Source of the DNA: Antechinus flavipes
Lineage: Eukaryota
Direction: 5' to 3'
Length of the DNA stretch: 64,000 nt
Assembly (NCBI RefSeq): GCF_016432865.1
Contig: NC_067400.1
Location: forward strand, 624,464,001-624,528,000
Shown here: positions 21,713 to 23,587 of the stretch, in pieces
Position numbering within the stretch: position 1 is the stretch's first letter
Layout of the letters: the number at the start of each line of letters is the position of its first letter
Translations under genes and position numbers: made by a program
The notes under the pieces: model-generated
Seen by the model: only the letters and a program-made list of their open reading frames with translations
Database searches by the model: none
Told to the model about the DNA's origin: nothing

Positions 21713-23587
21713 ATGGCGGACGGGCAGGTGAGTGCTGCTGACTGTGGCGGGCCCGGACTTCTCTGGAACCTCGGCCAACGGTAGCGGGGCCGCGCCTGAG
21801 CCACCCAGCGATGGGGCAGCGGGGGTTGAGCCGCGGTACCGGCCCGGCCGAGGCAGGGAAGAATCACGTGGTCTCAGGGTCTCGGGCCAGCCTTGACCCC
21901 CGCGTCTCCTCCTGCTCCCTCAGGTCTTGGTGATCGACGGGCGGGGCCACCTCCTGGGCCGCTTGGCGGCCATCGTGGCCAAGCAAGTCCTGCTGGGTAA
22001 GTGCGGGGGTCCGCGCCCCACGTGGGCGCGGGGAGGGCGCGCGGAGCCCGGGGAGGGAGGGCGCGCGGCAAGGCCGGTGATGAGGAACATTCACCATCTT
22101 TCGTTCGAGTCTCACGACCATGAGACCAAAACCATGCACCGCTCTGAGGCCTAGCCCGACCCCCACTCCCCCAGCCTCGCTCCGGCGCTGACCCGGGCTC
22201 CTTGTCCCCGCAGGCCGGAAGGTGGTGGTGGTTCGCTGCGAAGGCATCAACATCTCAGGAAACTTCTACCGGAATAAGCGTGAGTCGGGCGGGAGCGGGG
22301 ATTCGGGCGCGGCTGGCAAGTGATGTCCTTTCTCACGATGGTCTTCAGAGGTCCAGATGCCTGGTCCCTGCTGATTGTGCCTTAAGGCAGAGCTGATGCT
22401 GGCCCTGGGGGAGGGGCTGCTTCCATTACTCGGGACGGATTTTCACCCCCTTCTTCCCCCCCCACTCCTCCGCAGTGAAGTACCTGGCCTTCCTCCGAAA
22501 GCGCATGAACACAAACCCCTCCCGAGGCCCCTACCACTTCCGAGCGCCGAGCCGAATCTTCTGGAGGACCGTACGAGGTAGAAGCGGGGAGAGCGCCCTG
22601 CTCGTGGGGGGGCCGGGCCCGGGCTGTGATGATGGCGACTTTTGTCACAGGTTCGAGTTTAGCGACCATGAGATGACAAGATCCATGCACCTCCATCTGA
22701 GCTCTGGGAGGGAGGGGGTATTTGGTGCCCAACTAGAGATGAGGGGTGGCCCCTCACCTGAACTCTTCTCCGCAGGCATGCTTCCCCACAAGACCAAGAG
22801 AGGCCAGGCTGCCTTGGAGCGCCTCAAGGTGTTTGACGGCATCCCCCCACCCTACGACAAGGTGAGCTCCCCAAGGGTCTGCCCCCCTGGCGTCAGTGAT
22901 GCTCTGTGTTACCTACATTGTTTGAGGTCTCCCTGAGAAAACCAGTGTTACCTGAGACGCCCAACTTCAGCCAGCCCTGGGTGGGAGGCCCATCCCTAAT
23001 GTTCCACCATCACCCCATCGATCGGCTCCTTCCCTTGCAGCGTAAACGCATGGTGGTCCCAGCTGCTCTCAAAGTGGTCAGACTGAAGCCAACCAGAAAG
23101 GTGAGTGTGAAAGGGTTATTTCCCTAATTGGGGGGGAGGGGCTCTTTTCAGAACTGGGTGCAGTGATTCCTTCGTGTATTTCTCCCTACAGTTTGCATAC
23201 CTGGGGCGCCTGGCCCATGAGGTTGGCTGGAAATACCAGGCTGTGACTGCAACATTGGAAGAGAAGAGGAAAGAGAAAGCCAAGATCCATTACAGAAAGA
23301 AAAAGAAGCTTACGGTGAGACACGGGTTGGGGGGAGCCACGGGAGACACCTGGCAGATGATGTTTGTTCTCACGATGGTCTTCGGATGCCTCCGGGGTAC
23401 TGCCGACAAAGCCACATGGCTCAGCTGATGCCAGGGGACTTGGCGGGGAGGGAGCTGCCAGGTTCCTGGACCCACAGTCACAGTTTGTTTTCTCCCACAG
23501 AAACTACGAAAACAGGCAGAGAAGAACGTGGAAGGCAAAATCCACAAATACACAAAGGTGCTGAAGAAGCACGGGCTGCTGGTGTGA
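21713..23587 (+). CDS. RPL13A: 60S ribosomal protein L13a (uL13), 8 exons, 203 aa
   Basis: Exons 21713-21727, 21924-21996, 22214-22279, 22476-22577, 22776-22861, 23041-23100, 23192-23314, 23501-23587; [21 protein letters not shown]; APSRIF (Ser77) retained; AATAAA 23592-23597. Confidence 0.99.
22071..22152 (+). ncRNA. SNORD32A: Box C/D snoRNA U32A, RPL13A intron 2
   Basis: Terminal stem aggcc/ggcct, box C GTGATGA 22077-22083, D' guide TTCACCATCTTTCG (28S Am1511), D guide CCATGCACCGCT (18S Gm1328), box D CTGA 22144-22147. Confidence 0.93.
22311..22404 (+). ncRNA. SNORD35: Box C/D snoRNA of the U35 family (second copy), RPL13A intron 3
   Basis: 8-bp stem ggctggca/tgctggcc, box C GTGATGT 22320-22326, guide TCTCACGATGGTCT (28S Cm4506), D' CAGA 22346-22349, box D CTGA 22393-22396; 71 nt from the 3' splice site. 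Confidence 0.88.
22621..22704 (+). ncRNA. SNORD33: Box C/D snoRNA U33, RPL13A intron 4
   Basis: Stem gggc/gctc, box C GTGATGA 22626-22632, conserved core ttcgagttt..cgaccatgagatgac, guide CCATGCACCTCCAT, box D CTGA 22697-22700. Confidence 0.9.
22889..22961 (+). ncRNA. SNORD34: Box C/D snoRNA U34, RPL13A intron 5
   Basis: Stem ggcgtc/gacgcc, box C GTGATGC 22896-22902, guide TTACCTACATTGT (28S Um2824), D' TTGA, box D CTGA 22952-22955. Confidence 0.92.
23349..23435 (+). ncRNA. SNORD35A: Box C/D snoRNA U35A-like, RPL13A intron 7
   Basis: Stem cctggca/tgccagg, box C ATGATGT 23357-23363, guide TCTCACGATGGTCT, D' CGGA, box D CTGA 23425-23428; 3' half resembles recalled human U35A (gacaa.gcca..tggct.agctgatgccagg). 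Confidence 0.92.

What the first reader, a model, noticed from the sequence alone, without database searches (positions are those of the whole stretch)
22683..22700. SNORD33 guide is mismatched at the exact nucleotide that specifies 18S Um1326
Seen: the guide reads CCATGCACC-T-CCAT-CTGA, so the 5th base upstream of box D (22692) is U. Established rule: the D+5 base must form a Watson-Crick pair with the methylated residue. Against the conserved 18S sequence GGUGGUGCAUGG this base faces U1326, giving a U-U mismatch; recalled human U33 has A there. The D' guide (GGCGACTTTTGTCACAGG) is also unlike human and forms a small hairpin. Boxes, core and stem are intact. Inference: this U33 may have lost or changed its rRNA target while still being retained, which is notable because U33 has reported non-canonical roles in oxidative/lipotoxic stress.
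Basis: partly seen in the sequence, partly recalled or inferred. Interest (0 to 1): 0.7.

Follow-up and report, generated by a model that had tools for sequence, protein, structure and literature searches.

The report
SNORD33 guide mismatched at its methylation site
An otherwise intact small nucleolar RNA (SNORD33, in intron 4 of the ribosomal protein gene RPL13A) still pairs strongly with 18S ribosomal RNA, but it has the wrong base at the one position that selects the nucleotide to be methylated, and a related species has the same base, so this copy probably binds the rRNA without methylating it.

Summary
Window 22619-22706 (+) is a SNORD33 orthologue (Rfam 56 bits, cut-off 44) in intron 4 of RPL13A, between U32A-like and U34 snoRNAs. 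Box D is at 22697-22700, and the fifth base upstream of it (22692) is T, where the Rfam consensus has A.

The matching 18S base was T in all 108 eukaryotic rDNA loci sampled, so the guide makes a U:U mismatch at the methylation site. The other 13 of 14 guide positions pair. Two further changes (C at D+6 and D+14) strengthen the pairing, so duplex stability equals that of the consensus guide (-22.8 vs -22.2 kcal/mol).

The T is not an assembly slip. A contig from a related organism (E) is identical over 22606-22702, while its intron flank differs at 3 bases plus an indel in 28.

One new result: organisms A and B carry a retroposed U33 copy with a poly(A) tail elsewhere in the genome. It has changes in boxes D' and C'. 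Its base at D+5 could not be read.

Most likely this copy binds 18S without methylating U1326. Guides with a mismatch at this position are already described in archaea, and single-base inactivation of guides in vertebrates, so this is a new variant of a known kind. Expression and the methylation state of U1326 were not tested.

The parts
22619..22706 (+). SNORD33 (U33) orthologue, box C/D snoRNA
   Evidence: Rfam RF00133, 56.0 bits against gathering 44, full-length model match 1-85. Identical in a relative's contig over 22606-22702/22708.
22578..22775 (+). Host intron 4 of RPL13A (GT at 22578-22579, AG at 22774-22775)
   Evidence: Read directly. The flanking exons translate to ...RIFWRTVR and (G)[28 protein letters not shown]. 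Exon 5 gives a weak Ribosomal_L13 match, 16.5 bits and below the cut-off because the piece is short.
22619..22624 (+). 5' half of the terminal stem; pairs with 22701-22706
   Evidence: cmscan structure line: 6 positions, one non-standard pair.
22626..22632 (+). Box C, GTGATGA
   Evidence: Read directly; aligned to the model's GUGAUGA.
22637..22652 (+). D' guide region, diverged from the consensus and with no convincing target
   Evidence: The only recurrent match is a weak one, 6 Watson-Crick plus 4 G:U pairs, to 18S GUCUGUGAUG. The local hairpin is not significant.
22653..22656 (+). Box D' (TCGA)
   Evidence: Aligned to the conserved UUcGAGUU of the model. The same motif follows the U32A-like D' guide, which has a 14-nt perfect LSU complement.
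22670..22676 (+). Box C'-like element (GAGATGA)
   Evidence: Read directly; lies within the conserved GACcAUGAgau block of the model. The assignment is inferred.
22683..22696 (+). D guide (D+14 to D+1), complementary to 18S GUGGUGGUGCAUGG except at D+5
   Evidence: RNAduplex gives -22.8 kcal/mol with a 1x1 internal loop at D+5. The 18S segment was taken from 108 rDNA loci.
22692..22692 (+). D+5 (N+5) base: T where the consensus has A; it faces the invariant 18S U (human U1326)
   Evidence: The same base is present in organism E's contigs.
22697..22700 (+). Box D, CTGA
   Evidence: Read directly; aligned to the model's CUGA.
22701..22706 (+). 3' half of the terminal stem
   Evidence: cmscan structure line.
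22070..22153 (+). U32A-like snoRNA in intron 2. Its D guide pairs with the overlapping 18S stretch and has a canonical C at D+5 (target G two bases 3' of the U33 site)
   Evidence: Rfam 70.7 bits. The guide CCATGCACCGCT followed by CTGA was read directly. Its D' guide has a 14-nt perfect complement in 52 rDNA loci.

Best explanation
This is the genuine intronic SNORD33 gene of this lineage, still under purifying selection. Its D guide has changed from ...CAC-UA-CCAU to ...CAC-CU-CCAU. The guide still forms a stable 13-of-14 duplex with 18S rRNA on the 5' strand of helix 34 (human 1322-1335), but with a U:U mismatch exactly at the N+5 position that presents the ribose to fibrillarin. This copy therefore most likely binds pre-18S rRNA without methylating U1326, or does so very poorly. 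Its retention is best explained by the binding itself: it may assist folding, or it may compete with or time the action of the U32A-type guide that methylates G1328 on the same stretch. Shown here: the sequence, box integrity, the mismatch, duplex stability, and identity in a second organism. Inferred: loss of methylation, expression, and any role for binding alone.
For: Rfam match and intact boxes. T at D+5. The target base was T in 108 of 108 eukaryotic rDNA loci. Duplex stability is maintained at -22.8 against -22.2 kcal/mol for the consensus guide, because D+6 and D+14 changed to C and improve pairing. Organism E's orthologous intron carries an identical snoRNA (0 differences in 97-103 nt), whereas its 28-nt 5' intron flank has 3 substitutions and at least 1 indel. 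Neighbouring guides in the same host gene keep canonical targets with Watson-Crick pairs at N+5. In the literature, a Watson-Crick pair at N+5 is reported as essential, and conserved N+5 mismatches, including an A-to-U change giving U:U, are read as 'interaction without methylation' (PMC6009581). Non-functional antisense elements may compete with functional guides on overlapping rRNA (PMC8522698). A single mismatch can inactivate a conserved vertebrate guide (PMC6984369).
Against: No RNA evidence was obtained for this snoRNA. No methylation data exist for this species. This species' own 18S was not seen; invariance is inferred from other eukaryotes. Conservation rests on one related organism at only a few percent divergence, and the edges of the identical block were set by the aligner after the fact. 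The requirement for a Watson-Crick pair at N+5 comes from other systems and was not tested on this RNA.
Confidence: 0.58

Rival explanations
1. Redundancy. Another U33 copy, such as the retroposed copy seen in organisms A and B or a further paralogue, keeps the canonical A at D+5 and supplies Um1326. The intronic parent would then be relieved of selection on that one base, or be slowly decaying.
For:: in runs X1 (A) and X3 (B), a contig outside RPL13A carries an 84-nt or 69-nt U33 copy. It starts exactly at the mature 5' end after TTAATTAA and ends in about 20 nt of intron-like sequence plus A9-10. In A, two of its seven differences could not be placed and could lie at D+5 and D+6. Weber 2006 (PMC1687206) documents snoRNA retrocopies taking over from mutated parents.
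Against: The retrocopy carries changes in box D' (22655 G>A, TCGA to TCAA) and in the C'-like box (22675 G>T), and lacks one base at 22636, so it looks like a decaying pseudogene. Whether it sits in an intron is unknown. The parent is perfectly conserved in organism E while its flank diverges, which argues against relaxed selection.
Confidence: 0.2
2. The U:U mismatch is tolerated. The strengthened flanks (nine consecutive Watson-Crick pairs from D+6 to D+14 and four pairs from D+1 to D+4) hold U1326 in the active site well enough for partial methylation.
For: Duplex energy equals that of the consensus guide. The two accompanying changes both improve pairing, as if compensating. Some weak or imperfect guides are functional when tested (PMC6984369).
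Against: In vivo and in vitro work cited in PMC6009581 reports that a Watson-Crick pair at N+5 is essential.
Confidence: 0.1
3. Retargeting. The guide now directs methylation of an A within a sequence like AUGGAGGUGCAUGG in another RNA, such as an mRNA or a non-conserved rRNA segment.
For: A single base change can create a new specificity (PMC6984369). Rpl13a snoRNAs have reported non-rRNA roles (PMC7038934).
Against: No recurrent complementary site with A opposite D+5 was found in 108 rDNA loci, and none elsewhere in the window. The other guide changes increase the match to 18S, not to something else. The transcriptome was not searched.
Confidence: 0.07
4. Assembly or sequencing error, or a private polymorphism at 22692.
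Against: Two contigs from an independent data set of a related organism show the same base and an identical snoRNA.
Confidence: 0.03

Closest known systems
Human/mouse SNORD33 (U33), Rfam RF00133, guide for 18S Um1326
   Same: Same Rfam family. Same host gene and the same host-exon junction (between ...RTVR and GMLPHK..., which I recall as intron 4 in human too), within the U32A/U33/U34/U35A cluster. Same boxes and the same 18S stretch bound.
   Different: D+5 is U instead of A, giving U:U at the methylation site. D+6 and D+14 are C and pair better. The D' region is unrelated to the consensus.
Archaeal C/D sRNAs with a conserved mismatch at N+5 (Pyrobaculum sR33, sR25, sR56, sR116; Par sR09 with an A-to-U change giving U:U), Lui et al. 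2018, PMC6009581
   Same: The guide-target complementarity is conserved, with a mismatch exactly at the methylation position. One case has the same A-to-U substitution. The published reading is that binding matters rather than methylation.
   Different: Those are archaeal RNAs with different targets. This case is a mammalian orthologue of a guide whose site is traced to the last eukaryotic common ancestor (PMC3511168).
Vertebrate guides inactivated or retargeted by single-base changes (SNORD69/SNORD19, X. laevis SNORA28), Deryusheva et al. 2020, PMC6984369
   Same: A one-nucleotide change in an otherwise conserved antisense element alters guide activity in a taxon-specific way.
   Different: Those cases were tested experimentally. 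This one is sequence inference only, and it concerns the N+5 base of SNORD33.
Non-modifying antisense elements that overlap a functional guide's site (SNORD12 against SNORD48), Deryusheva et al. 2021, PMC8522698
   Same: Two snoRNAs pair with overlapping rRNA sequence, one of them unable to modify it; competition has been proposed.
   Different: Here the pair would be U33 against the U32A-like guide on 18S 1322-1335. No methylation data are available.
snoRNA retroposons (snoRTs), Weber 2006, PMC1687206
   Same: The extra U33 copy in organisms A and B starts at the mature 5' end, carries a short stretch of downstream intron and an A tail, and sits in AT-rich DNA.
   Different: The target-site duplication, genomic location and guide sequence were not recovered.

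Membership tests
SNORD33 (Rfam RF00133, box C/D snoRNA) | Covariance-model score above the curated gathering threshold | tested here: met
   56.0 bits against 44, model positions 1-85 of 85.
SNORD33 (Rfam RF00133, box C/D snoRNA) | Box C (RUGAUGA), box D (CUGA) and a terminal stem | tested here: met
   GTGATGA at 22626-22632, CTGA at 22697-22700, and a stem 22619-22624/22701-22706 with one non-standard pair.
SNORD33 (Rfam RF00133, box C/D snoRNA) | Orthologous position: an RPL13A intron between the U32A and U34 snoRNAs | tested here: met
   Order along the gene is U32A-like 22070, SNORD35-like 22315, U33 22619, U34 22889, U35 23352. Exons were read. The human cluster in RPL13A is described in PMC4378963.
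SNORD33 (Rfam RF00133, box C/D snoRNA) | Expressed, stable mature RNA in a snoRNP | not tested
   Reads were laid on DNA contigs, and no RNA run was laid.
Functional methylation guide for 18S Um1326 | At least 9-10 bp of guide-target duplex ending next to box D | tested here: met
   13 of 14 positions pair, at -22.8 kcal/mol.
Functional methylation guide for 18S Um1326 | Watson-Crick pair between D+5 and the target nucleotide | tested here: not met
   D+5 is U (22692), and the target was U in 108 of 108 rDNA loci. This species' own 18S was not available.
Functional methylation guide for 18S Um1326 | U1326 is 2'-O-methylated in a manner dependent on this snoRNA | not testable with these tools
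   This needs RiboMeth-seq or primer extension in this species.
Non-methylating rRNA-binding C/D guide (conserved N+5 mismatch, as in PMC6009581) | The mismatch at N+5 is conserved across species while the flanking complementarity is kept | tested here: inconclusive
   Identical in one related organism (E), with the intron flank diverged. More distant relatives were not seen; run X12 gave nothing.
snoRNA retroposon (for the extra copy in organisms A and B) | Starts at the mature 5' end, has an A-rich tail, and is flanked by a target-site duplication | tested here: inconclusive
   The 5' end and the A9-10 tail were seen in loose ends. A target-site duplication could not be read from 30-nt loose ends.

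The most novel reading that the evidence does not exclude
This mammalian lineage has given up 18S Um1326, a ribose methylation traced back to the last eukaryotic common ancestor. It nevertheless keeps SNORD33 under selection as a non-methylating binder of helix 34, acting as a folding helper or as a competitor that tunes the neighbouring Gm1328. That would be a vertebrate example of a modification guide converted into a pure RNA-binding factor.
Probability: 0.3. Interest if true: 0.65.

Novelty: new variant of a known kind. Interest (0 to 1): 0.45.

Why it matters
SNORD33 and its site (human Um1326, Arabidopsis Um1270, yeast snR55 site) are among the guide-site pairs traced to the last eukaryotic common ancestor (PMC3511168). 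According to a review (PMC7038934, citing Rimer 2018), the Rpl13a snoRNAs guide the predicted rRNA methylations, shown by comparing wild-type and snoRNA-deleted mice.

A lineage in which the guide is conserved but cannot pair at the methylation position is a natural experiment. It separates the value of snoRNA binding from the value of the methyl group in a functionally central part of the small subunit (helix 34, next to the decoding region). It could also show how two guides that share one rRNA stretch, U33 and U32A, interact.

The test is simple: methylation mapping of 18S in this species, plus the sequence of the retrocopy. If the retrocopy carries the canonical guide, the case becomes an ordinary example of a retrocopy relieving selection on its parent.

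Tried and rejected
1. Assembly error: rejected, because two contigs of organism E show the same base.

2. Compensating change in 18S: judged very unlikely, since the position was T in 108 of 108 eukaryotic rDNA loci. This species' own rDNA was not available; the scan's notes for this genome record no rDNA.

3. Shifted or bulged pairing registers on the GGU repeats of 18S: worked through by hand, and all give extra mismatches.

4. Alternative targets: no recurrent target for the D guide with A opposite D+5. The D' guide has only a weak match of 6 Watson-Crick plus 4 G:U pairs, taken as chance. Nothing was found elsewhere in the window.

5. D' 'hairpin': not significant.

6. Orthologues with the variant guide in metagenome contigs: 0 hits.

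7. The variant guide string in paper texts: only two unrelated primer hits.

8. Earlier scan notes on U33 paralogues or rDNA in this genome: none.

9. Papers that might list marsupial or platypus U33, and the in-vitro mismatch study (PMC2413151, PMC1869030): not held.

10. The D+5 base of the retrocopy: the reads tool does not list differences closer than about 15-19 nt to the end of a laid piece, and 22692 lies 14 nt from the end, so its state remains unknown.

11. The spliced RPL13A protein was not joined. Exons were read and searched singly by reference, and the joined step was left out.

13. The organism was not identified, because the runs are coded.

Full report
**What is there**

The window between about 21.7 and 23.6 kb (+ strand) is an RPL13A gene with eight exons, read directly. 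Exon 5 gives a weak Ribosomal_L13 match. The spliced protein was not joined; exons were handled singly by reference.

Rfam finds five box C/D snoRNAs in its introns:
- U32A-like, 22070-22153, 70.7 bits.
- SNORD35-like, 22315-22405, 60.9 bits.
- SNORD33, 22619-22706, 56.0 bits against a gathering score of 44.
- SNORD34, 22889-22962.
- SNORD35, 23352-23437.

The SNORD33 hit lies in intron 4 (22578-22775), the intron that splits ...RTVR from GMLPHK..., as I recall for the human gene. A published description places the human snoRNA cluster in RPL13A (PMC4378963).

**The observation**

The anatomy of the snoRNA is as follows:
- Box C: GTGATGA at 22626-22632.
- Box D': TCGA at 22653-22656.
- A C'-like element: 22670-22676.
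- Box D: CTGA at 22697-22700.
- Terminal stem: 22619-22624 paired with 22701-22706.

The fifth base upstream of box D is T at 22692. In the model's strongly conserved 3' block (CAUGCAC UA CCAUCUGA), the window matches every column except UA, where it has CU.

**The target**

I fetched 108 eukaryotic rDNA loci from metagenome contigs, using a pattern with N at the position opposite D+5. All 108 have T there. Given the flanks, the target U (human U1326, helix 34) is invariant across the eukaryotes sampled. This species' own 18S was not available.

Against that segment the window's guide pairs at 13 of 14 positions, with a 1x1 U:U loop at D+5. The computed duplex is -22.8 kcal/mol, against -22.2 for the consensus guide. 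The C at D+6 replaces a G:U wobble, and the C at D+14 adds a pair. The guide has thus lost the one pair that matters for catalysis while keeping, and even reinforcing, its binding to the same 18S stretch. Shifted or bulged registers are worse.

As controls, the U32A-like D' guide and the U34 guide in the same gene each have a 14-nt perfect complement to LSU rRNA. Both have a Watson-Crick pair at N+5. The U32A-like D guide has the canonical C at D+5 for the G two bases downstream.

**Is it real?**

The region is held by runs from a graded series of related organisms, A to G, with word shares from 0.99 down to 0.29. I laid four runs on intron 4 only.

- Organism E: an 8769-nt contig covers 22606-22702 with no differences, and a 37-nt contig covers 22673-22708 with none. 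The letters of the long contig just upstream start with the same GT splice site but differ from the window at 3 bases plus an indel in 28. This is therefore the orthologous intron of a different genome. The snoRNA, including T22692, is identical while the flank has diverged. That excludes an assembly slip and argues for purifying selection. The caveats are that this is one relative at low divergence, and that the edges of the identical block were set by the aligner.
The tool warns that a filter drops contigs and that a hole proves nothing.
- Organism G: nothing was laid.

**An unexpected paralogue**

In A and B the contig that was laid is a different locus. It carries an 84-nt (A) or 69-nt (B) copy of the snoRNA. 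The copy is preceded by AT-rich sequence ending in TTAATTAA, begins at GGCT, the start of the terminal stem, and is followed by about 20 nt resembling the downstream intron and then A9-10. This is the signature of a snoRNA retroposon (Weber 2006, PMC1687206).

The copy differs from the window as follows:
- G>A at 22655, which turns D' from TCGA to TCAA.
- A>G at 22661.
- G>T at 22675, in the C'-like box.
- One base missing at 22636.
- Probably differences at 22626 and 22635 as well, inferred from B's loose end.

It therefore looks decayed. However, the tool does not list differences within roughly 15-19 nt of a piece's end, and 22692 is 14 nt from the end. Two of A's seven differences remain unplaced, so the retrocopy might still carry the ancestral UA. 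This is the main open point.

**Mechanism**

The literature reports that a Watson-Crick pair at N+5 is essential for methylation. Conserved N+5 mismatches in Pyrobaculum sRNAs, including an A-to-U change giving U:U, are read as cases where the interaction matters and the modification does not (PMC6009581).

In vertebrates, single-base mismatches in conserved antisense elements can inactivate guides in a taxon-specific way (PMC6984369). Non-modifying elements that overlap a functional guide's site have been proposed to compete with that guide (PMC8522698). According to a review (PMC7038934, citing Rimer 2018), the Rpl13a snoRNAs do guide their predicted rRNA methylations, shown by comparing wild-type and snoRNA-deleted mice.

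The best reading is therefore a conserved SNORD33 that binds 18S 1322-1335 but does not methylate U1326. Um1326 would then be either lost in this lineage or supplied by another copy. Because the U32A-like guide uses the overlapping stretch, the mismatched U33 could act as a folding helper or as a competitor. These last steps are inference.

**Rivals**

- Redundancy through the retrocopy or another paralogue (0.2).
- Tolerance of the U:U mismatch (0.1).
- Retargeting to an RNA with A opposite D+5 (0.07). No candidate was found in the rDNA loci or the window, and the transcriptome was not searched.
- Error or private polymorphism (0.03).

The D' 'hairpin' is not significant (-2.9 kcal/mol, z -0.9). 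Divergence of the D' region is unremarkable for a guide with no assigned target. The suggested link to oxidative or lipotoxic stress has no support in the sequence.

**Novelty and verdict**

The RNA is a member of a known family, and the phenomenon of an N+5 mismatch in a conserved guide has published precedents. What is new is its occurrence in a mammalian orthologue of a guide-site pair traced to the last eukaryotic common ancestor (PMC3511168), together with compensating improvements elsewhere in the duplex.

I rate it a new variant of a known kind, with interest 0.45. It is testable with one methylation map and one genome-wide scan.

- No expression data were obtained.
- The organism was not identified.
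- Searches for the variant guide in metagenome contigs, in paper texts and in the scan's own notes found nothing useful.

Noticed in passing
window 22315-22405 (+), RPL13A intron 3: There is a second SNORD35-type snoRNA (Rfam 60.9 bits) besides the one in intron 7 (23352-23437, 89.9 bits). Both keep the CTCACGATGGTCTTC guide block. As far as I recall, human RPL13A has no snoRNA in this intron. No SNORD35 hit lies elsewhere in the window.
   Followed up: partly
not in the window; contigs of runs X1 (organism A) and X3 (organism B) laid on 22622-22705 / 22637-22705: A retroposed copy of U33 with an AT-rich 5' flank, about 20 nt of intron-like 3' extension and an A9-10 tail. It has changes in box D' and the C'-like box. 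Its guide at D+5 could not be read. Just after 22705, organism A's copy reads CTGA where organism B's reads CTGG.
   Followed up: partly
window 22637-22652 (+): The D' guide of this U33 has a weak complement (6 Watson-Crick plus 4 G:U pairs) to the conserved 18S stretch GUCUGUGAUG, found in 83 of 108 rDNA loci. N+5 would face a G that is not a known methylation site by my count. This is probably chance.
   Followed up: partly
window 33571-33650 (-): A mir-150 precursor (Rfam 73.8 bits against 55) lies about 10 kb downstream of RPL13A, consistent with conserved synteny with the human RPL13A region (recalled, not tested).
   Followed up: no
window 22673-22708 (+), run X8: Organism E's long contig stops at 22702, and a separate 37-nt contig overlaps it by exactly 30 nt. 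That is the pattern of a branch in a k=31 assembly graph, which could reflect heterozygosity or a second near-identical copy of the U33 3' end in that genome.
   Followed up: no
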